Source: Tubulanus polymorphus
Lineage: Eukaryota > Animalia > Nemertea
Direction of reading: 5' to 3'
DNA: 64,000 nucleotides
Assembly (NCBI RefSeq): GCF_964204645.1
Contig: NC_134035.1
Span: 1,426,001-1,490,000 of the forward strand
In this document: in pieces, positions 3,001 through 32,878 of the stretch
How the letters are laid out: every line of letters starts with the position of its first letter
Numbering within the stretch: position 1 is the first letter of the stretch
Position numbers and translations under genes: made by a program
Notes under the pieces: generated by a model
The model's input: the letters and a program-made list of their open reading frames with translations, nothing else
Databases searched by the model: none
Told to the model about the DNA's origin: nothing

Positions 3001-6000
3001 TCCTAATGATGACAAACATCCTAAAAGATATAAATGAAACTAAATAGATTTGAGGCCACCAATCAGTTATACAGAGTTAGAGTAAAGTCTAGTTACTGGT
3101 GTATCATAGAAATGGCAATCTAAGGTAGGCTACTCCCCAAAATGTGTGTCGGGGTCAAATATTTTTTGTCTCAGATTTTGATGAAATTCCGGTAAGACAT
3201 GTATTCTGGGGTGCTGATCACAAATCTGAACGAATTTTTCGGATCCGAGGCCCAGAAAATGTGAAATTCGAATTTTTGGGGGGACCCCCTAAATTTTCAA
3301 AAGGCCTTGGACCCCAGATTTTTTGAGATATTCGAAATCTGATTTCAAATTTGGAATCAGCACCCCTAAAAATATAAAGGACTAAAATTTTAAGCAAATC
3401 GAAGAGATTCGATTTTTTGGCCAAAAATGGCAAAAATCTAAGGTGTTAGTCCAGGAGTTTTTTTTCGGCGAAAATTTTTTTTTCTCTGATTCCTTCGAAA
3501 TTTGATAGGAATATGTATTCTGAGGTGTAGATTCCGGATCCGCAATCAGATTTTGAATCGGAATTCATCTTCATGGGCAAATAAGGGTTTTAATGGCCAA
3601 AATATGCACCCCAAAAATGGGGTACAAAGTCAAAATTTTTTTTGGCCCAATTTTAATGAAATTTTGTGCAGACATGTTTTTTGGGGTGCTGATTACAAAT
3701 ATGAGGTTAGATTTTGGATCCGAGGCACCTGAAATGAGATATTCAGGATTTTGTGTTTTGACCCCCTAAATTTCGTCACAAATTTTGATGATATTTGCCT
3801 GGGAAACGAAATTTTTTTAATGATGTCAAATATTCAATTGATTTTTAAGGTAGAAATTGATGCTCTTACTAAAACCCTGAATTATAATTCCTGCAACACA
3901 ATTACAGGCTGCTACAAATAACCACATTGACAATTATTATGAAATGCAGTGTAAACAGTGTTTACAGATAAATTGCTTTCTCATAATTGTTTTGGAAACT
4001 TATAAGAAATTCTACTCACACATTCACTAGCCCTTATCTAGCAGTAATGGTAGTCCACCGAGTTCCACAAATCGACATACAGAGTTCCACACCTCCTTGA
4101 GTCCACCACTGACTGTTTTTTTTGAGTATCAATCCACTTATAGTCTGGTTAGTTGACTAAATAGTCCAGTTAGTTCACATATAGTCTGGTTAGTTCACTA
4201 GTATCCAGTTAGTTCACTAATAGTCCAGTTATTTCACATATAGTCTGGTTAGTTCACTAGTAGTCGGGAATAAGTTGACTGAAGAGAAGTGATAAATTTC
4301 AGTTGAAGTCCACCACGTCCAGTATTCGTGATGAAGTTTACACCACAGCCCGACAAAGGAAAACCTGAAATACTAAAATTTAAATCACATTAACAGGGAG
4401 ACTGACTGAGAGGTTGAGGGAGGATGGGATGAGAGGTTGAAGGAGGATGGGATGAAAGGTTGGGGACAATGGGGTGATGAGGTTGGGTGAGGTTGAGGGA
4501 GGATGGGGTGCAAGGGAAGAAAAACAGTACAATTACTCTGACATAGTAAAGCAAAGGCTTAAGCAAAAGTTTTCAGCAGTTTTCAGTCACACTGGATTAA
4601 CAGATTCTCGTTTTACACAAGAGCCCAGCCTGTGGCAGTGGGAGAAAGCCGTTGTAACTAACTGGTCGAGTCAGGTCCGGGCCCTCACTGTGTCGTCGGA
4701 ACGCGTGTCTGCGAAGTCAACTGGAGTGACTGCGTCCCTGAGGACATATTGAAATATCATGAATTATTGTCTTTTTACCCAATATCAAAATTCGTACATT
4801 TAAAATCGTCGTGGCTTTAAAGTCTTTATCAATTGAGGGAATAGTTCACTGTAAATAAAGAATTAGCGATTGAATTGAGCCCGCTCCACAGTAAAAATAC
4901 CGCGATCAATTCAATCTCGACCGTCTAGTGCTGCCCCTATGTATAAAGACAGCGTGGAAAACGTGAACTAACATAATACTCGCTGGCCAGAGTCTTCGAA
5001 CGGCCGTAGTGGACGAACTAATTACCGATTTGCGGGCCGGATTCCGAGGAAATTTCTCAAACTCTGAAAACTGCTCTGAAACGTTCGAACCAAACAATTT
5101 TTCTATAAAAGAATAAGCCTTAAAAGAGTTAATTTGAATCGGGGTATTTCTAGTATGGTCTGGGAGAGAGCGACAGGTGTTTGTAAGTTCCCTGTTTATT
5201 TGCGCGCAAATAGACTATAATCGAAGAAAAAATATGGACATTTTGTCAATTCTGATGATAAATTATCATTAAAAAATGAAAATGAATAATTTATTTTGTA
5301 TACAAATACTATATTAATTGATAAGTAAGTAAATTTTAGCTAAAAAAATTAAATATGTTACCTAAAAATAAGGAAATATCATACAAAATTTAGAACGCAT
5401 TCATAGTATCATATTTAATCAGAATTAGACGACACACTGGTCTGTATTGTACGTAATAAGGACATTTAAATTCCGGCGGTAAATTTGCGCTACTATTTTA
5501 GTTCACAGAAATTCCGCTATCGTTATTCATAGGGGCAGCACTGTACGGTAAGTATCTAACTCAGCCTCGCTATCTTACTGTGGCATGCGAGCAATACAGA
5601 TATTTTTCTTAGCCGAATTTCGTTGATTATCTAATACGATTCCATTGTATATGAATAATTCGACTATCGTTTAAGGTTTTTAGAAGGGGATCATCTTTCT
5701 AAAACGAATTTCAAACCGTTTGTGATAGAACTCTTTTGTCTGCGGAATGTATTAGCATCCGGTAAAGCGCTAGGCTCACATGCCAAAGGAAGAATTTCAA
5801 GCAAATTAAATTTTATTCTCTAAAATAGTGCATTCAACTACCACTAACACTGTAACCAGAAATAATGCTCGGAAACTATTAAAGAAGAGTAAATTTGAAG
5901 TCAAGTTCTCCCAATATTTGTTCGTTTGTTTGTTTATCCTCCCGGTGAGTTCTAACACTGCCCACACATATTCATCTAGTTCATCTGATCCTGATCATCA

Positions 6001-9000
6001 AACTCAAAAACGTCAATAATTCCATCCTAATGATGACAAACATCCTAAAAGATATAAATGAAACTAAATAGATTTGAGGCCACCAATCAGTTATACAGAG
6101 TTAGAGTAAAGTCTAGTTACTGGTGTATCATAGAAATGGCAATCTAAGGTAGGCTACTCCCCAAAATGTGTGTCGGGGTCAAATATTTTTTGTCTCAGAT
6201 TTTGATGAAATTCCGGTAAAACATGTATTCTGGGGTGCTGATCACAAATCTGAACGAATTTTTCGGATCCGAGGCCCAGAAAATGTGAAATTCGAATTTT
6301 TGGGGGGACCCCCTAAATTTTCAAAAGGCCTTGGACCCCAGATTTTTTGAGATATTCGAAATCTGATTTCAAATTTGGAATCAGCACCCCTAAAAATATA
6401 AAGGACTAAAATTTTAAGCAAATCGAAGAGATTCGATTTTTTGGCCAAAAATGGCAAAAATCTAAGGTGTTAGTCCAGGAGTTTTTTTTCGGCGAAAATT
6501 TTTTTTTCTCTGATTCCTTCGAAATTTGATAGGAATATGTATTCTGAGGTGTAGATTCCGGATCCGCAATCAGATTTTGAATCGGAATTCATCTTCATGG
6601 GCAAATAAGGGTTTTAATGGCCAAAATATGCACCCCAAAAATGGGGTACAAAGTCAAAATTTTTTTTTGGCCCAATTTTAATGAAATTTTGTGCAGACAT
6701 GTTTTTTGGGGTGCTGATTACAAATATGAGGTTAGATTTTGGATCCGAGGCACCTGAAATGAGATATTCAGGATTTTGTGTTTTGACCCCCTAAATTTCG
6801 TCACAAATTTTGATGATATTTGCCTGGGAAACGAAATTTTTTTAATGATGTCAAATATTCAATTGATTTTTAAGGTAGAAATTGATGCTCTTACTAAAAC
6901 CCTGAATTATAATTCCTGCAACACAATTACAGGCTGCTACAAATAACCACATTGACAATTATTATGAAATGCAGTGTAAACAGTGTTTACAGATAAATTG
7001 CTTTCTCATAATTGTTTTGGAAACTTATAAGAAATTCTACTCACACATTCACTAGCCCTTATCTAGCAGTAATGGTAGTCCACCGAGTTCCACAAATCGA
7101 CATACAGAGTTCCACACCTCCTTGAGTCCACCACTGACTGTTTTTTTTGAGTATCAATCCACTTATAGTCTGGTTAGTTGACTAAATAGTCCAGTTAGTT
7201 CACATATAGTCTGGTTAGTTCACTAGTATCCAGTTAGTTCACTAATAGTCCAGTTATTTCACATATAGTCTGGTTAGTTCACTAGTAGTCGGGAATAAGT
7301 TGACTGAAGAGAAGTGATAAATTTCAGTTGAAGTCCACCACGTCCAGTATTCGTGATGAAGTTTACACCACAGCCCGACAAAGGAAAACCTGAAATACTA
7401 AAATTTAAATCACATTAACAGGGAGACTGACTGAGAGGTTGAGGGAGGATGGGATGAGAGGTTGAAGGAGGATGGGATGAAAGGTTGGGGACAATGGGGT
7501 GATGAGGTTGGGTGAGGTTGAGGGAGGATGGGGTGCAAGGGAAGAAAAACAGTACAATTACTCTGACATAGTAAAGCAAAGGCTTAAGCAAAAGTTTTCA
7601 GCAGTTTTCAGTCACACTGGATTAACAGATTCTCGTTTTACACAAGAGCCCAGCCTGTGGCAGTGGGAGAAAGCCGTTGTAACTAACTGGTCGAGTCAGG
7701 TCCGGGCCCTCACTGTGTCGTCGGAACGCGTGTCTGCGAAGTCAACTGGAGTGACTGCGTCCCTGAGGACATATTGAAATATCATGAATTATTGTCTTTT
7801 TACCCAATATCAAAATTAGTACATTTAAAATCGTCGTGGCTTTAAAGTCTTTATCAATTGAGGGAATAGTTCACTGTAAATAAAGAATTAGCGATTGAAT
7901 TGAGCCCGCTCCACAGTAAAAATACCGCGATCAATTCAATCTCGACCGTCTAGGTCTGCCCCTATGTATAAAGATAGCGTGGAAAACGTGAACTAACATA
8001 ATACTCGCTGGCCAGAGTCTTCGAACGGCCGTAGTGGACGAACTAATTACCGATTTGCGGGCCGGATTCCGAGGAAATTTCTCAAACTCTGAAAACTGCT
8101 CTGAAATGTTTGAACCAAACAATTTTTCTATAGAAGAATAAGCCTTAAAAGAGTTAATTTGAATCGGGGTATTTCTAGTATGGTCTGGGAGAGAGCGACA
8201 GGTGTTTGTAAGTTCCCTGTTTATTTGCGCGCAAATAGACTATAATCGAAGAAAAAATATGGACATTTTGTCAATTTTATCATTCAAAAATGTAAACGAA
8301 TAAGTTATTCTGTATATAAATACTACATTTATTGATAAGTAAGTGAATTTTAGCTAAAAAGAATTAAATATGTTACCTAAAAAATTAGGAAATATCATAA
8401 AAAATTCAGAACGTTTTCATAGTATCATATTCAATCAGAATTAGGCGCCACACTGGTCCGTATTGTACGTAATAAGGAAATTTAAATTCCGGCGGTAAAT
8501 ATGCGCCACTATTTTAGTTCACAGAAATTCCGCTATCGTAATTCATAGGGGCAGCACTGTACGGTAGATATCTAACTCGGCCTCGCTATCTTACTGTGGA
8601 ATGCGAGTAATAAAGATATTTTTCTTAGCCGAATTTCGTTCAATGTTTAATACGATTCGATTGTATATGAATAATTCTATTATCGTTTAAGGTTTTTTGA
8701 AGGGGATCATCCTTTTAAAACGAATTTCAAACCATTTTTAATAGAACTCTTTTGTCAGCGGAATGTATTAGCATCCGGTAAAGCGATAGGCTCACATGCC
8801 AAAGGAAGAATTCTGAGCAAATTAAATTTTATTCTCTAAAATAGTGCATTCAACTACCACTAATTCACTGTAACCAGAAAAAAATGCTCTGAAACTATTA
8901 AAGGAATAACTTTCTAGTAGGCTTAAGGCTTAAGAGTAAATTTGAATCGGGGATATTCCTAGTTTCGTCTGGGAGAGAACAACAGGTTCTAGATGCCACG

Positions 9001-15411: not shown

Positions 15412-21949
<6,538 letters not shown>

Positions 21950-22120
21950 CTTGGCCCGGCGAATCTGAAACGAAACGACGGATTAACGATACATGAAAAC
22001 CGGAACGACGGTTGGGTGTCAAACCAGGAGAGGGGGGGGCACAAAAACGATACATGAAAACCTGAACAGCGGTTGGGTTTTAAACCGGGGGAGGGGAGAC
22101 ACTAATATAAATCAATTCAG

Positions 22121-22214
22121 GATCCAGTTCTACAGTCATGAGGTTGAATTAAATTAGTTTATTTTCATAGTTAACTCTGAGTCAAATCTTAACTCACAAC
22201 TGTGGAACTGGGTC
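22121..22214. mobile_element. ~95-110-bp palindromic MITE family with CWG target-site duplications (Harbinger-like); other copies at 35220-35321, ~57942-58034, 58942-59052
   Basis: Ends G(A/G)CCC(A/G)GTTCCACAG and CTGTGGAACTGGGTC; flanked by CAG/CAG (22121, 57942, 58942) or CTG/CTG (35220). Confidence 0.7.
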
Positions 22215-23745
22215 CAGATCTCTAAAATATTTAGATAGGTTTCAATCCGTAGCTTAGAGACTGAAACCTTTCAGATACTTTTCACCGTATTGAAGTGTGA
22301 ACTCTGGATGGTCAATAATAAACCAGGAACAATAAACTGCATCAGTTCAAGTGCGTCTAAAATATTTAGTTTTCATTCTGCAGCATGAAACCTGCACCCC
22401 TTCAGACCCCTCACAATTATATTAAGTGCAAAGTGTGGTCGATCAGTTTTTGAAAGTGCTCTGATAAAATGCCTAATGTCTGGTGTTTGTAGTTCATTTT
22501 CAATTAAAAATGTCTCAGGTGAAGTTCAGAACACATGCGACTATCAGTTGTTTTCGATAGTGAGCTGACAACAAAATATCTAATGTTCGTTCGTTTTCAA
22601 TCAAAAATGTCTGAAATGAAGTACAGAGTCCACGCTGCAGATCAACACACTTTAAGAATAGCAAATCATTTAATGAAAGAAACTGTGATACCAATAATAA
22701 TAACAGAGACCGATCAATAAACGGCACGTGATATAGAAGTATTTAAACGATTATTGATTATCAAACCGTGAACGCCGGGGTTAGGTTACTTAGTAACCGC
22801 AGCGGAGAACGTACCGCGCGCGACAAAGACACGACCATTGATTGATGACATGAAGTTCGGATGACGAGACGTCAATGAGCGAATATATACAAAAACACCG
22901 ACCACTCTGAGAGTCACAACTACAGTAGGCCTATATAGACATTCAGTTGCAACATTAGCTTAAAATTCAGAGAAAACCCACAATACAGACAAATCTAAAC
23001 ATCGTTTTTTCCTTTAGTTTCGGGTGCAATCCTTTCACATTTTCAGCATTCATTTGAAAATGAGTTATAGCTTTATATTACTATCATTTTCAAATGTCTA
23101 CAAGTAGTCTCTGAAGAATTCCAGAATTGGTAGGACCAATCGAAACCTACCATTATACGGTAATGGTTAAATTCTAAGCCCCACTAGTTTTCAGAATTAG
23201 TGACCATTATGAAACGCAATTCAGCTGCACTCTCAGAACTGAGGTCCTAGACGCTCAAATCCTACAGCTTAATATGAAATATTACCTGCGACTTCGCGTG
23301 GAGATATTGTCCGAACAGGAACAAATCAGACGTCAAATTTTATCAACGCACAATAACGAGGTCATTATTGACAGCGGCGTATCTATATATAACAATAATT
23401 CAAACCTCTCGACTAAACTTAACATATCAACGCAAAAAACACCATCGACGACGATTTACGTAGATTAGAAATGAATTAATAAACAACTCGCTGAAACCAC
23501 TGAACACACATAGAATCAATCAAAAATAACAACGTAGTAAACATGATTAATTTGCCGGGAGAAAAAAAAAATGATTACAGCACCATCAATCACAACAATC
23601 TATTAATGAATAGTGACTATTTTTAAACCAAACCACTACAACACCGTAGACGAGCAAAATAATATCGAGGGGAATTGACTGACTGAATCCAAACCTACGT
23701 AGAACTAAAAGGTGACTATGAAAACCGAGTTAATACAGGTAACAA

Positions 23746-23917
23746 CAGTGTTTTCAATAAGTGCCAGGTCCCAGGTTCCAGACACGTCAGTCGTTTGTAA
23801 AGGACCCGCCTGGTTTTTTCATTCAAACCTGCTTTCGTTTCAGGGAGTGTGAAATATTGCGGGACCCTCCTGTTTTTCAAAGGGACCTGGCTTGTTAATT
23901 CCTTATTGAAAACACCG
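23746..23917. mobile_element. MITE with CAGTGTTTTCAATAAG TIRs; second copy at 51195-51347
   Basis: 16-bp TIRs, a 5-bp direct flank AACAA/AACAA here, and a closely similar internal sequence in both copies. Confidence 0.8.
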
Positions 23918-24309
23918 AACAATCGGCAGTCTGATATTAGAATTTAAAATGTATCACGCGAAGTTCTGAACACATTCGAAAAGTGGATGATTATAAGTTC
24001 TAAGATCGGGTGATTGATTATTGAATGCCTGAGGGGGGGGGCGCCAGACTGCGGATCGTTACTTGTTTACAGGAGGACGGACAAAATGGAACTCATTAAC
24101 CGCTTCCTACAACCAATTTGAATATTGCCCTCTTCACCGGAGTGTGATCATCAGTGGAGGATTGATCTAGAGTATATATATATATATATAATCGCTGTGA
24201 CGATAACACAGACATAGAGGAAGCTAGTAGGGTCAGAGGAGCAGACGGGTATAAGGTATTCAGGTAGGCAGGAGAGAGAGAGAGAGACTAGAGAGTTGAT
24301 ACATCTCAC

Positions 24310-24342
24310 CTTCAGCGGTGGTCGACTTAGACGTAAACCCAT
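24310..24342 (-). CDS. Putative alternative first coding exon of the NDR kinase (MGLRLSRPPLK)
   Basis: ATG at 24342, 11 codons, donor AAG|GTGAGA (phase 0). It is in frame with the acceptor at 21964 (ATT CGC CGG GCC AAG ATG). Confidence 0.55.
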
Positions 24343-24589
24343 TCACAACATCATGCTACCATTTTCTATATATAACAAATCTTCACAATATATACAACTA
24401 TATAAAATACTGATCATTCCATACGGTCGAATTCCTTTATAACGCTACAATCTGAGCCGTCTCAAATCAAACACCGGGTCTACATTGCGCAGTGGAAATG
24501 GTTTTAAATCCTTAGATCGGTCATTCATGTTAGATTGGCTCTATAAAACAATGATGGTATGAGACTGGTCTTTAATCTAAGCCCTGCAG

Positions 24590-24730
24590 GGGCTGGTTCC
24601 ATTATAGTCAGGGCTAAGACTTAAGACCAGTCTAAGACCAACTTGGTTCTATAGCCAATCTAACAACTTAAAACCAGTCTTAAGATTTAGGACGAATTTT
24701 GATATTAAGTCTTGACAATGGAACCGGCCT
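24590..24730. mobile_element. Palindromic TTAAGACCAGTC(T)TAAG-type short element family (also ~19960-20052, 30560-30790, 32350-32530, 34815-34895)
   Basis: Recurrent GACTGGTCTTAAG / CTTAAGACCAGTC blocks, some with GGTTCCAT...ATGGAACC inverted ends. Confidence 0.6.
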
Positions 24731-26511
24731 GCGGGGTTTGTGCAGAATAGGGAATTCAAATTCCCTGACTTTAACAAGAAAAGAGTCTGAATTCCCTGAT
24801 TTTCCCTGCAGGAAAATGACTTAACCGAGAATCGACTTAACCGCGAATTCCCTGACTTTCCTGACCTTCACAAACCGTGTACGTCCAAGTGACAACTTTC
24901 AAACACTCTTGACTCTTCTAAAAAAACGTGGTGTCAAGCTATGATTAATATTACAATAATGAAACTGATAATAATAATTTGTAAATTTGTAAAGCGCCAT
25001 TTAAAAAAGTTTCACCAGCTCTTAAAATGGATGTTAGTTAAAACAGCATCAAAAGTCCATAGACTTTACAGAAAAGTGGATGTCCTAGATGTCTCAATTA
25101 AATCCTAAAATTTTGAATAGCAATTGAGTACAATTGAATACAATTGAGCCAGTGATACCGCGTAACTTTCATTCTTGTTCAAACAACTGATTACGTTTCA
25201 CATTTCGTTTCAGTTTGTGATCGCGTTATAAAGGCCTTTGACGAAACGAAACGCTGTGATTAAAAAAAAAAAGTAAAAGCAAATTCATGCAGGCATGATG
25301 AATAAGCACTTCTTCGGCGTTCTATCCGTCACTGTAATCCTCCTCGGAGAAATTCTATAACACCAAATACCAGTGCTAGTATTCGTTATTCTTTCTGGCA
25401 ACTTAACTCTTACTCATATAAACTATATCAAAATGTAATACAGTTCGGGCTCAAATTCTTGACTGAAACGCAACCGACACTGAGTGCAACAATCAACTGA
25501 CATAAATACACCCGTTCGGAACTGAAACTGAATGTCAATGTGAAATATCGCGGGTATATTAGTAATATCGCAGGTATTTTAACCCTTGACATTATTGGTA
25601 CACATTTACCACGGTTAAGTCTATGTTCTAATTTAAGGAAGTGGATACTATGCCGACACAGCAGCATTATTCTAGTAAACAAAATCATAAAAGATAAATG
25701 AAACTGCATGTCAATGTGAAATATCGTGGGTCCCTATATTTGCCCTATGTTAACATTTGACATTATTGGTATACAGAAACCGCAGTAAAATGTTTTAATT
25801 TAAGGAAGTGATTATTATGCCAAGGCAGCATTATTCTAGCAAACGAAATCATGCTAACAAAAAAAATCAGCATTATCATTATAAAGTTAGGGTAGATAGA
25901 GGGTAGGTTTAGTGCAACAGTCCTCCTCAGCAGTTCGGAAGACGCTACACGCTGGCAGAAAAAATACTGGATAACCGCTCTTTATTATAATTACATAAAT
26001 TAGCGTTAAATGTGGAGTTACGTAAAAGTGCAGATCTTGGCGTAAATGGTTCAATCAATTACATTAAATATCATTGTTTCAGATTCAAAATGTCATCAGC
26101 AATTCAGTACATTGCCATTGGTTAATTTTAAATCTTCACTAGAAAGATTTTAGCCTGGATTCTGTCATTCAGTAGATTATCACAAGAGGTGCAGATCTGC
26201 ACTTTTACCTGGAGTTATCTTCATAAAGTTGTAACGTTAACGAGGTATAATACCGACTCGGCTAAATATCCACTACCTTCTACTATACTAGTAGGCCTAT
26301 ACCCGCACACAGACTGACATGGCCGGGCAAGCTGGTGAAACCGGGCTAACTTAACTAACCATTCTTGAATTTTCACCATGTGGAGGGACAACCGGTCCGA
26401 ATTATTATTTCTTTTAAGGGGTAGCTAGCAATGAAAACGTAAAACCTGAAAAAAAATTGACTGGTTGTTGTTTCCAAATCCTCCTTGGCTTTTTTGCCTT
26501 GACCGACTCAC

Positions 26512-26725
26512 CTTCGCCTTTTCAATCGAATTATTTCTCGTTTTCCGACCAAACGACACAATGTCACCAGTCAGACGATCTGATCAACTGGAATCCCGAG
26601 CCACCTATCTAAATATCAGCGATCAGCAGCAGAAACAGCCGAAAATATCGCCGAATATCAGAAAAAAAATCTCGAAATTTCAGCAGAATCTGACAGACCT
26701 AACAACACAATCGAGAAATATCATG
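26512..26725 (-). other. Probable non-coding first exon (5' UTR) of the NDR kinase
   Basis: Consensus donor AAG|GTGAGT at 26511, CpG-rich, no in-frame ATG after an in-frame stop. The upstream boundary is approximate. Confidence 0.55.
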
Positions 26726-27110
26726 TAAATCCGCGGCGACTAATAGTTCCTTTATCTAATTTGAGATTTTGAATTTGAACAGAAGCAAAACTGTTTATAA
26801 ATTGAGAAACCCATTAATAGGCATTAAACCTGATAAAATCATCTTAAAAAATATATATTTATAAATGTTGGGAAAATATATTATGTATTCGCGGATGAAT
26901 TATATTTCGGTGCGTGGAGGTCATTTAAGGTTCGAGTCCGATGAGTTTCATAAAAAAGAAAATATTACCCGAGTGTTTCCTTTTCATTATTCACGTAGAA
27001 TTTCTCAACTAAAATCATTGAATTGAACTAAATTTACCTAAATTCATGATGGTCATTTAATTGAAATTACGACAGGGCGGTTACACCATAGAATGGTTAC
27101 ACATCCGTCT
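26726..27110. promoter_or_regulatory. Probable bidirectional promoter between NDR kinase and ABCB8
   Basis: Divergent first exons: the NDR donor at 26511 and the ABCB8 ATG at 27198 are under 700 bp apart. Confidence 0.5.
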
Positions 27111-27197
27111 TCGAGTCTCAAGGACGCGTGGACCGGGAAATAAACAAACAAGAAAAATAGGAAATAAATAAATCTTTCTTATTTTGACTTTTAAACG

Positions 27198-32878
<5,681 letters not shown>

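What the first reader, a model, noticed from the sequence alone, without database searches (positions are those of the whole stretch)
21950..24342. Candidate naturally N-myristoylated, polybasic isoform of NDR/tricornered kinase from an alternative first exon
Seen: a short exon 2.3 kb upstream of the first coding exon reads ATG GGT TTA CGT CTA AGT CGA CCA CCG CTG AAG|GTGAGA (phase 0). The 15 nt between the acceptor (21964) and the canonical ATG (21949) are open and in frame (IRRAK). Spliced, the protein begins [22 protein letters not shown]. Established: Gly2/Ser6/basic7 is the N-myristoyltransferase consensus, myristate plus a basic patch is the Src-type two-signal membrane anchor, and artificially membrane-targeted NDR kinases become constitutively phosphorylated and active. 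Inference: promoter choice (26512 non-coding exon vs 24310 coding exon) could switch between a cytosolic and a membrane-tethered, pre-activated kinase. I do not know of a described natural myristoylated NDR isoform. Caveat: two tiny upstream ORFs (MVA*, MML*) directly precede this ATG.
Basis: partly seen in the sequence, partly recalled or inferred. Interest (0 to 1): 0.8.

Follow-up and report, generated by a model that had tools for sequence, protein, structure and literature searches.

The report
Possible lipid-anchored NDR kinase isoform
In the NDR/STK38 kinase gene of a ribbon worm, a tiny upstream exon with promoter-like signals of its own could give the kinase a fatty-acid membrane anchor, but no RNA evidence could be obtained and relatives lack the anchor signal, so it remains unproven.

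Summary
On the minus strand, ATG 24342 to AAG 24310 reads MGLRLSRPPLK, followed by GTGAGA. The acceptor at 21964 leaves 15 open, in-frame bases (IRRAK) before the ATG at 21949.

The gene is the RefSeq "serine/threonine-protein kinase 38-like" gene of Tubulanus polymorphus. Its isoform X2 (460 aa) is reproduced exactly by 13 exons of the window.

Evidence that the exon is real:
- Its donor is the second best of 388 GT sites in the 5.8 kb upstream region.
- The only TATAAA plus TCAGT pair with canonical spacing in that region lies just upstream of it.
- The segment is single copy in the genome.
- RefSeq models of nine molluscs read through the same linker from upstream coding exons.
- A RefSeq isoform X1 of this gene exists, but I could not retrieve it.

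Evidence against:
- Only DNA runs were found, so there is no RNA evidence.
- None of the relatives examined has a Gly2/Ser6 start.
- The ATG is the fourth in its leader, after two tiny ORFs, and has T at -3.
- The constraint on the linker is equally explained by a conserved basic extension encoded by the main first exon, often without an AUG. Human STK38 has a CUG-initiated extension.

Verdict: a plausible lineage-specific alternative first exon. Myristoylation and pre-activation remain inference. I did not search the joined spliced model.

The parts
24434..24441 (-). TATA-box-like TATAAAGG, 30 nt upstream of the Inr-like A at 24411
   Evidence: sequence; the only TATAAA plus TCAGT/TCATT pair at 28-33 nt spacing in 21965-27800 on the minus strand; dinucleotide shuffles give a mean of 0.08 pairs per region.
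24409..24413 (-). Initiator-like TCAGT, with the predicted transcription start at A 24411
   Evidence: This is inferred from the consensus only; there are no 5' end data.
24310..24411 (-). Candidate alternative first exon. It would be about 102 nt if transcription starts at 24411. The coding part is 24342-24310 (MGLRLSRPPLK), phase 0.
   Evidence: donor score 10.1, second of 388 GT sites; single copy in the genome.
24351..24362 (-). Upstream ORF 1, ATG GTA GCA TGA (MVA*), in a strong start context (A at -3, G at +4)
24343..24354 (-). Upstream ORF 2, ATG ATG TTG TGA (MML*). Its stop codon directly abuts the MG ATG.
24304..24309 (-). Donor GTGAGA of the candidate exon
21950..21964 (-). Linker of 15 nt (IRRAK) between the conserved acceptor (cag|ATT) and the annotated ATG; open and in frame
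   Evidence: The same intron position occurs in L001, L002, L011 and L013. Relatives read [SG]RRSK or GxRxK here.
21825..21949 (-). First annotated coding exon (MATVGEQ...TN, then two bases of the next codon, Arg in P0290), encoding the start of the N-terminal regulatory region
   Evidence: 100% identical to RefSeq isoform X2 (P0290).
15412..20812 (-). The remaining 12 coding exons of the kinase: 20812-20761, 19819-19697, 19471-19388, 19017-18894, 18812-18658, 18315-18213, 17910-17840, 17755-17638, 17565-17442, 16213-16118, 15702-15614 and 15530-15412
   Evidence: an exact spliced reconstruction of P0290, checked exon by exon inside the script. (Pkinase domain).
26512..26586 (-). 3' part of the main first exon, with a perfect AAG|GTGAGT donor. 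It is open in phase 0 for 25 codons (SDRLTGDIVSFGRKTRNNSIEKAK) and the 189 nt read upstream contain no ATG. It is the likely ortholog of the conserved basic extension exon.
   Evidence: the exon-end peptide ranks 7th of 2523 positions against the W[RK]L[KR]x[KR][FL]xKA[KR] profile.
22815..22838 (-). Rival in-phase candidate exon, ATG...GCG|GTACGT (MVVSLSRA)
   Evidence: gene-specific donor score 9.9, but only 6 of 9 against the general consensus. It shares no sequence similarity with the 24310 exon.

Best explanation
The gene is the single-copy-looking NDR/STK38/tricornered kinase gene of the ribbon worm Tubulanus polymorphus. The segment 24411-24310 on the minus strand is most likely a genuine, lineage-specific alternative first exon. 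It would be driven by a TATA plus initiator core promoter inside the first intron and spliced from its strong donor at 24310 to the conserved acceptor at 21964. The longest ORF of that mRNA starts at ATG 24342 and gives [22 protein letters not shown]..., 16 residues longer than the annotated 460-aa protein. If that AUG is used, removal of Met1 exposes Gly2 in a sequence that fits the N-myristoyltransferase consensus (Leu3, Ser6, Arg7). It is followed by a patch of six basic and no acidic residues, so a Src/MARCKS-type two-signal membrane anchor is chemically plausible. However, the AUG is the fourth in the leader and has a weak context. Many ribosomes would therefore translate the tiny upstream ORFs or start at the canonical AUG, and the anchored form would probably be a minor product. 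What is shown: the sequence features, the gene identity, the conserved intron position, and the use of the linker as coding sequence in other animals. What is inferred: transcription and splicing of this exon, use of its AUG, myristoylation, membrane binding and kinase pre-activation.
For: - Sequence and frame.
- The donor is second best of 388 GT sites under a matrix built from this gene's own 12 donors, and one of three strong consensus donors in the region.
- The only TATAAA plus TCAGT pair at canonical spacing in 5.8 kb sits 69 nt before the ATG; shuffles give 0.08 pairs per region.
- The segment is unique in the 268-Mb assembly, so it is not a repeat.
- The search space is bounded upstream by a divergently transcribed ABC transporter gene from about 27926.
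- The same scan applied to the scallop locus L011 returns only the RefSeq-annotated upstream coding exon. That exon lies 2.65 kb before an identical acceptor-15 nt-ATG arrangement.
- RefSeq or GenBank models of nine molluscs start in upstream exons and read through the linker.
- RefSeq names the window's product 'isoform X2', so an X1 supported by transcripts exists.
- X2 is not on record where only the longest product is kept, whereas the scallop X1 is.
- There are no NAGNAG acceptors and no duplicated exons that would offer an easy alternative source of X1.
Against: - There is no RNA evidence. The only runs found are genomic contigs, and no 24310-to-21964 joint was seen. My query stretch was mostly intron, which hides small RNAs.
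- No exon starting MG with a small residue at position 6 was found in the two closest contigs, but only 3.8 kb (L001) and 1.8 kb (L013) of upstream sequence were available.
- The extension exons of relatives show no similarity to this one beyond a short M-x-x-R-L-[AS]-R resemblance to the oyster MEKRLAR.
- Two upstream ORFs and T at -3 disfavour the MG AUG.
- The protein-level constraint on the linker, which would otherwise argue for an upstream AUG exon, is explained as well by the conserved basic extension on the main first exon.
- A second in-phase candidate exists at 22838-22815.
- The site was chosen post hoc from a very large scan.
Confidence: 0.5

Rival explanations
1. The segment is not an exon. 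An AT-rich 4.5-kb first intron contains, by chance, a short ATG ORF that ends at a donor-like GTGAGA, with TATA-like and TCAGT-like strings nearby. The kinase is made only from the 26512 first exon.
For: No RNA support was obtained. There is no conservation in L001 or L013. Strong donor matches occur by chance about 1.5 times per 6 kb, and a third of shuffles have one with an in-frame ATG. The intron is 37% G+C and holds 5 TATAAA and 28 TCA[GT]T strings.
Against: The combination of the second-best donor with the only correctly spaced TATA/Inr pair within about 100 nt is expected roughly 0.002 times by chance. RefSeq has a further isoform of this gene, and no other source for it was found. Orthologous genes in molluscs have an annotated coding first exon at a similar place.
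Confidence: 0.35
2. The exon is real, but its ORF is incidental. The alternative promoter yields an mRNA whose leader, with its two tiny upstream ORFs, tunes translation of the ordinary kinase from the canonical AUG. Little or no MG-initiated protein is made.
For: The first AUG of the leader has a strong context (aaaAUGg) and the MG AUG has T at -3. The second upstream ORF stops directly at the MG AUG, whereas the canonical AUG has A at -3 and G at +4. Upstream extension exons differ widely between mollusc species, which suggests that many annotated upstream AUGs are not under selection. Leaders of the orthologous mRNAs in other species also carry a positionally conserved small upstream ORF.
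Against: Very short upstream ORFs allow reinitiation and leaky scanning, so some initiation at the MG AUG is expected. The frame from it is open. The peptide fits the myristoylation consensus, which arose in only 0.1% of shuffles.
Confidence: 0.3
3. The in-frame linker is translated, but from the main first exon. The 26512 exon is the ortholog of a conserved basic extension exon and is read from a non-AUG start (a CUG, AUU, GUG or ACG codon lies in the open 25 codons). This would give a polybasic but unlipidated N-terminal extension, as proposed for human STK38. This reading is compatible with the MG exon also being real.
For: Five transcript contigs from other species share W[RK]L[KR]x[KR][FL]xKA[KR] plus GxRxK directly before MATVGE. 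They show six-fold-codon swaps (CGA/AGG, TTG/CTC/CTG/CTA). Mean BLOSUM62 per residue is 2.89 in this frame against 0.48 and 0.47 in the other two, at 56% nucleotide identity. Three of the five have an in-frame stop just upstream and no AUG. The T. polymorphus exon end RKTRNNSIEKAK ranks 7th of 2523 positions against the profile, and the exon has no ATG in 189 nt. Human STK38 is listed with a Ribo-seq-supported CUG start 22 codons upstream, spanning the exon 1-exon 2 junction (PMC9789052).
Against: The similarity of the T. polymorphus exon to the profile is weak and needs a 3-residue gap for the best fit. There are no ribosome data for any invertebrate. The species behind the five contigs are unknown. 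The best-placed CUG has a poor context (C at -3, A at +4).
Confidence: 0.4
4. An N-terminally extended isoform exists but comes from the other in-phase candidate, 22838-22815 (MVVSLSRA|GTACGT). That start has no Gly2 and so cannot be myristoylated.
For: Its gene-specific donor score is 9.9, third of 388 GT sites. GTACGT-type donors are used twice in this gene.
Against: It matches only 6 of 9 positions of the general donor consensus. No TATA/Inr pair precedes it. An out-of-frame ATG lies 13 nt upstream.
Confidence: 0.08

Closest known systems
Src-family kinases and MARCKS: N-myristate plus polybasic two-signal membrane anchor (established knowledge; PROSITE PS00008 pattern)
   Same: The start is Met-Gly, with an uncharged residue 3, Ser6 and a basic residue 7. 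A dense basic cluster with no acidic residue follows (R4, R7, K11, R13, R14, K16).
   Different: Nothing has been shown biochemically. The kinase is an AGC-group NDR kinase, not a tyrosine kinase. Pro8-Pro9 and Leu3 are untypical of the best substrates. The anchor would sit in front of the MOB-binding regulatory region.
Kinases whose alternative first exon decides myristoylation: ABL1 isoform 1b versus 1a, and PKA catalytic subunit C-alpha-1 versus the sperm form (own knowledge, not checked here)
   Same: One gene has two promoters or first exons, only one of which supplies Met-Gly. The rest of the protein is identical.
   Different: Those isoforms are experimentally established and conserved among vertebrates. 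Here the exon is unverified and not seen in relatives.
Engineered membrane-targeted NDR1/2, LATS1 and MOB1 (Hergovich et al. 2005, Mol Cell Biol 25:8259, as summarised in PMC4880841)
   Same: They put NDR at the membrane, where hydrophobic-motif phosphorylation and activity rise. This is the basis for the 'pre-activated' inference.
   Different: Those are artificial fusions using a heterologous lipidation motif. The review held here describes membrane-targeted MOB1 recruiting NDR1 and LATS1. I found no natural lipidated NDR isoform in the library.
Annotated N-terminally extended STK38-like/tricornered isoforms of molluscs (Magallana gigas X2, Mizuhopecten yessoensis X1, Mytilus trossulus X2, Physella acuta X4, Ruditapes philippinarum X1, Haliotis rubra, Gigantopelta aegis, Mya arenaria, Dreissena polymorpha)
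   Same: An upstream coding first exon is spliced in phase 0 to an acceptor 15 nt before the MATVGE codon, reading through a basic [SG]R[RNS]SK linker. In the scallop the exon lies 2.65 kb upstream, against 2.35 kb here.
   Different: Their extensions start ME, ML, MK, MH, MS, MF or MA. The one MG start (Physella MGGSRRSK) has Arg, not a small residue, at position 6. They are computer models and none has been studied.
Human STK38 non-AUG (CUG) N-terminal extension from ribosome profiling (Fedorova et al. 2022, Nat Commun 13:7910, PMC9789052)
   Same: Translation starts upstream of the annotated AUG, across the exon 1-exon 2 junction of an NDR kinase mRNA. This parallels the open, AUG-less frame of the 26512 exon and the conserved basic extension in invertebrate transcripts.
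   Different: The human extension has a negative PhyloCSF score among mammals in that paper's table, and it joins 5 nt rather than 15 nt before the AUG. No sequence similarity to the invertebrate extension was tested here.

Membership tests
NDR/STK38/tricornered kinases (AGC group) | Protein kinase catalytic domain followed by an AGC C-terminal extension | tested here: met
   Pkinase matches on single exons. The precomputed families for P0290 are PF00069, PF07714 and PF00433. P0290 is encoded exactly by the window.
NDR/STK38/tricornered kinases (AGC group) | Conserved N-terminal regulatory region, activation-segment site and hydrophobic motif | tested here: met
   The P0290 sequence holds [31 protein letters not shown] and [11 protein letters not shown]. 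It is 80-86% identical to named STK38-like/tricornered proteins. The source name is 'serine/threonine-protein kinase 38-like isoform X2 [Tubulanus polymorphus]'.
N-myristoylated proteins (NMT substrates) | Gly at position 2 after the initiator Met | tested here: met
   ATG GGT at 24342-24337.
N-myristoylated proteins (NMT substrates) | PROSITE PS00008 pattern G-{EDRKHPFYW}-x(2)-[STAGCN]-{P} | tested here: met
   G-L-R-L-S-R fits the pattern; the match was coded. No dedicated predictor was available.
N-myristoylated proteins (NMT substrates) | The Met-Gly codon pair is the real translation start of a real mRNA | not testable with these tools
   The context is unfavourable: it is the fourth AUG, with T at -3.
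N-myristoylated proteins (NMT substrates) | Covalent myristate on Gly2 | not testable with these tools
   This needs metabolic labelling or mass spectrometry.
Alternative first exons (alternative promoter usage) | Own core promoter and a donor joined to the common second exon | tested here: inconclusive
   The TATA/Inr pair and the strong donor are present, and the acceptor is conserved. No transcript was seen. RefSeq isoform X1 could not be fetched.
Conserved N-terminal extension of invertebrate NDR kinases (W[RK]L[KR]x[KR][FL]xKA[KR] exon) | The candidate MG exon is homologous to that exon | tested here: not met
   The profile score of the 24310 exon end is -7.4, rank 518 of 2523. The 26512 exon end ranks 7th.

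The most novel reading that the evidence does not exclude
A ribbon worm makes a naturally N-myristoylated, polybasic NDR kinase from an intronic TATA promoter. Promoter choice would then set how much of this Hippo-related kinase is tethered at the membrane, where it would be primed for activation without MOB-mediated recruitment. It would be the first natural lipid-anchored member of the NDR/LATS family. It would sit beside a second, more ancient way of extending the same N-terminus: a conserved basic peptide read from the main first exon, in several species without an AUG.
Probability: 0.2. Interest if true: 0.7.

Novelty: new variant of a known kind. Interest (0 to 1): 0.45.

Why it matters
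NDR/LATS kinases are switched on at membranes through MOB and upstream Ste20-like kinases, and artificial membrane targeting is the standard way to activate them. A natural isoform with a built-in lipid anchor would show that evolution has used the same trick. It would also provide a simple genetic handle (G2A, exon deletion) on where NDR must be to act.

The second result may reach further. The sequence just upstream of the annotated start of invertebrate NDR mRNAs is under protein-level selection, often without an AUG. Together with the ribosome-profiling call for human STK38, this suggests that the textbook N-terminus of this kinase family is incomplete in many animals.

If the exon proves unused, the case becomes a caution about reading short ORFs in AT-rich introns.

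Tried and rejected
- RNA test. The look-up of sequencing runs on 21800-24450 returned only two runs kept as contigs. Read laying on 21700-26700 showed them to be genomic: pieces cover the intron, and the joints seen are repeat artefacts at 22.2-22.5 and 24.6 kb. Choosing a long, mostly intronic query was a mistake.
Looking up P0290 by identity found nothing. All three word searches and the single exhaustive search had been used.
- Joined spliced model. Only exon-by-exon references were used.
- Homologs of other species' extension exons in the window. tblastn found only chance hits. 27230-27174 has no donor. In 37038-36991 the frame does not continue into the motif.
- The 24310 and 22815 candidates as duplicates of each other. 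Rejected: they do not align.
- NAGNAG acceptors or mutually exclusive exon copies as the source of isoform X1. None were found.
- Identifying the species behind L001, L004, L005, L007 and L012 from run or sample numbers in the literature. No paper holds them. NDR is too conserved (79-86% between phyla) to place them by identity.
- The bacterial-type promoter scan is irrelevant to an animal gene.
- Literature searches for a natural myristoylated NDR or Trc isoform found none. The original Hergovich 2005 paper is not held.
Full report
**1. Observation**

The minus strand reads ...gaaaATGgtagcATGATGttgTGA ATG GGT TTA CGT CTA AGT CGA CCA CCG CTG AAG|GTGAGA. The ATG lies at 24342 and the last exon base at 24310. 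The acceptor ...cgtttcag|ATT CGC CGG GCC AAG ATG GCT... puts the exon start at 21964 and the annotated ATG at 21949. The 15 bases between them are open and in frame, reading IRRAK. The two tiny upstream ORFs are as described, at 24362-24351 and 24354-24343.

**2. The gene**

The word search returned P0290, which NCBI names [quoted passage not shown] (460 aa).

A small spliced aligner found 13 exons between 21949 and 15412 on the minus strand. All have GT-AG borders and they reproduce P0290 residue for residue. The protein has the kinase and AGC-tail domains, the N-terminal regulatory motif, the activation-segment site and the hydrophobic motif of NDR kinases.

Upstream, a divergently transcribed ABC transporter gene begins near 27926 on the plus strand. 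Any 5' exon of the kinase must therefore lie between 21965 and about 27800.

**3. Could RNA be checked?**

No. When laid on 21700-26700 they behave as genomic DNA of another individual. They cover the intron with about 1.2% differences, and there is no joint from 24310 to 21964.

The two differences inside the first coding exon (21863 and 21905) fall on third codon positions and are synonymous, as I worked out. No difference was listed in the candidate exon or in the roughly 300 nt upstream of it, which is too little to weigh.

My query was mostly intron, and the tool warns that this hides a small RNA.

**4. Intrinsic evidence for the exon**

- Only three sites in the 6 kb upstream match the donor consensus at 8 of 9 or better: 27731, 26512 and 24310. 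Only 24310 has an in-phase ATG ORF.
- Under a matrix built from this gene's own 12 donors, 26512 and 24310 rank first and second of 388 GT sites.
- A TATAAAGG at 24441-24434 lies 30 nt before a TCAGT whose A is at 24411. This is the only TATAAA plus TCAGT/TCATT pair at 28-33 nt spacing in the 5.8 kb, and shuffles give 0.08 such pairs per region. It predicts a first exon of about 102 nt.
- The segment is unique in the 268-Mb assembly.
- As a control I ran the same donor-plus-ORF scan on the scallop locus L011. It returned only the RefSeq-annotated upstream coding exon, read from two alternative Mets.

These checks were chosen after I had seen the sequence, so I discount their nominal significance.

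**5. Evidence against translation of the MG ORF**

With a start at 24411 the leader holds four AUGs:

| AUG | Context | Reads |
|---|---|---|
| First | strong (A at -3, G at +4) | three codons (MVA*) |
| Second and third | in one frame | MML*; the stop abuts the MG AUG |
| Fourth (MG AUG) | weak (T at -3) | MGLRLSRPPLK... |

The canonical AUG, 48 nt further on in the spliced mRNA, has A at -3 and G at +4. Leaky scanning and reinitiation would give some MG-initiated protein, but the leader does not look built for it.

**6. Comparative evidence**

The exhaustive search with the first coding exon and two word searches gave three results.

(a) The intron 15 nt before the ATG is conserved. Genomic contigs read ...CAG|GGT CGT CGA TCC AAA ATG (L001)...CAG|GGT GTC AAG TCC AAG ATG (L002) and ...CAG|AGT CGC CGC TCC AAA ATG (scallop L011).

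(b) Nine mollusc models start in upstream exons and read through this linker:
- oyster: MEKRLARLEALIRLFTSEQ-SRRSK
- scallop: ...DPDRFFR-SRRSK
- mussel: MKRLAIFFK-SRRSK
- abalone: MHSCFDFLKTK-SRRSK
- Gigantopelta, Physella (MGG-SRRSK), Ruditapes, Mya and Dreissena

(c) None has Gly2 together with a small residue at position 6. The closest genomic contigs, L001 (3.8 kb upstream available) and L013 (1.8 kb), hold no comparable MG exon.

The first seven residues of the candidate (MGLRLSR) resemble the oyster start (MEKRLAR). I estimate the chance of that at about 1 in 1000 after allowing for the comparisons made. It is a lead, not a demonstration of homology.

**7. A competing explanation for the open linker**

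Five transcript contigs from unnamed species carry a conserved basic peptide directly in front of MATVGE (L004, L012/L019, L005/L006/L015, L018 and L020; L005, L006 and L015 carry the same leader):

| Contig | Peptide before MATVGE |
|---|---|
| L004 | IWRLKGRFRKTK-GYRGK |
| L015 | IWRLKNKFRKAK-GLRPK |
| L018 | IWRLKNKLLKAR-GRHSK |
| L020 | HWKLKTKLGKAR-SVKSK |
| L012 | SWKIRNRLRKAR-ALQRAGK |

 The codons show six-fold family swaps: Arg CGA/AGG/AGA and Leu TTG/CTC/CTG/CTA. In the four ungapped sequences the mean BLOSUM62 score per residue is 2.89 in this frame, against 0.48 and 0.47 in the other two. Those two frames contain stops, and nucleotide identity is only 56%. The peptide is therefore translated.

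Two contigs have an AUG 29 codons before the junction, and their whole extensions align (MSFFPVFDGRSTVKE... and MPLFPFLDGKSTVRE...). The other three have an in-frame stop two to seven codons before the Trp and no AUG.

All five also carry a small upstream ORF that starts at a conserved position. It is always in the same other frame, 32, 32, 29, 20 and 32 nt before the TGG.

In T. polymorphus the 26512 exon is open in phase 0 for 25 codons (SDRLTGDIVSFGRKTRNNSIEKAK|IRRAK), and the 189 nt read upstream contain no ATG. Its last 12 residues rank 7th of 2523 positions against the five-sequence profile, at exactly the exon end. The MG exon ranks 518th.

The literature search then showed that human STK38 is listed among genes with likely exclusive non-AUG initiation. 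The proposed start is a CUG 22 codons upstream, the extension spans the exon 1-exon 2 junction, and the CUG is conserved in the listed primates, with opossum named in the table's field for the most distant species (PMC9789052).

The protein-level constraint on the linker therefore does not need the MG exon. It can come from a non-AUG-initiated basic extension on the main transcript.

**8. RefSeq isoform X1**

The name "isoform X2" implies that an X1 exists. In every pair of same-species isoform lengths seen here, the lower number is the longer protein: Apis cerana X1 623 against X5 541, and Dermatophagoides X2 680 against X3 594.

The identity look-up keeps only the longest product of a gene. 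It lacks P0290, Physella X4 and oyster X2 but holds scallop X1. This fits an X1 longer than 460 aa, although the tool may simply leave out the window's own genome.

There are no NAGNAG acceptors and no duplicated exons. An N-terminal difference, as in molluscs and insects, is therefore a reasonable guess. The MG exon would give 476 aa and the weaker 22838-22815 candidate (MVVSLSRA) 473 aa. I could not fetch X1.

**9. Mechanism and odds**

I put the odds as follows:

| Reading | Odds |
|---|---|
| 24411-24310 is a real alternative first exon | about 0.55-0.6 |
| A physiologically relevant MG-initiated, myristoylated kinase is made | about 0.2-0.3 |
| The site is a chance look-alike | about 0.35-0.4 |

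If the protein is made, Gly2, Leu3, Ser6 and Arg7 fit the N-myristoyltransferase pattern (PS00008). Six basic and no acidic residues in 16 would supply the electrostatic second signal. Artificially membrane-recruited NDR1 and LATS1 gain activity (PMC4880841). A tethered isoform could therefore be primed, but that step is inference only.

**10. Comparison and novelty**

- Alternative first exons that decide myristoylation of a kinase are known (ABL1 1b and PKA C-alpha-1; own knowledge).
- N-terminally extended NDR isoforms are annotated in many protostomes.
- I found no natural lipidated NDR/LATS kinase in the library.

If true, this would be a new variant of a known kind, confined as far as seen to this lineage. 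The conserved basic extension, frequently without an AUG, is the better-supported and possibly broader observation, and it deserves a follow-up of its own.

Noticed in passing
L004:42-143, L012:73-180, L015:104-163, L018:68-127, L020:72-137; window 26512-26586 (-): Transcripts of five unnamed invertebrate species carry a conserved basic peptide, W[RK]L[KR]x[KR][FL]xKA[KR] plus GxRxK, directly before the annotated NDR start. It has a clear coding signature, but only two of the five have an AUG. The T. polymorphus 26512 exon looks like its AUG-less ortholog. Human STK38 has a Ribo-seq-called CUG extension (PMC9789052).
   Followed up: partly
L004:64-81, L012:95-112, L015:87-110, L018:60-89, L020:58-99: Each of these leaders has a small upstream ORF whose ATG lies 32, 32, 29, 20 and 32 nt before the conserved TGG. 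It is always in the same other frame, with unrelated peptides (MAVLQ, MANLL, MLVKAKI, MCKPLKFGD, MWINQSRCFAIGS). This is a positionally conserved upstream ORF that overlaps the extension frame.
   Followed up: no
window 22815-22838 (-): A second in-phase ATG mini-exon candidate, MVVSLSRA|GTACGT, lies 850 nt before the acceptor. Like the MG exon it has L-S-R at positions 5-7, but the DNA is not alignable to it.
   Followed up: partly
window 27926-31955 (+): A divergently oriented ABC transporter gene has an N-terminal exon near 27926-28100 and nucleotide-binding exons at 30859-31206 and 31638-31955 (the latter with the motif [16 protein letters not shown]). Its start lies about 1.3 kb from the kinase's 26512 exon, so the two genes may share a bidirectional promoter.
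   Followed up: no
window 3144-4752 and 6168-7777: A tandem duplication of about 3 kb lies downstream of the kinase gene. Near-identical ORF sets are repeated with a 3024-3025 nt offset, including proline-rich 'SPHPPSTS' frames. It is probably a repeat or satellite-like unit.
   Followed up: no
P0148/P0151, P0137, P0273: Other NDR/Trc N-termini begin with Met-Gly but do not fit the consensus at position 6: MGCGIISFFF... (arthropod-like transcript), MGSKKLLLKKRKNK... and Physella acuta isoform X4 MGGSRRSK. None was examined further.
   Followed up: no
window 22034-22534, 23704-24037, 24539-24705, 26042-26208: Parts of the first intron have read-contig depths hundreds to thousands of times the single-copy level, with many internal joints. 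They are high-copy repeats or transposon fragments. The candidate exon lies between them in single-copy sequence.
   Followed up: no
window 29035-29460: A long (TA/TATATA)n-type microsatellite reads as IYIYIY in ORF lists. A (CT)n run at about 24270-24290 follows the candidate exon's donor.
   Followed up: no
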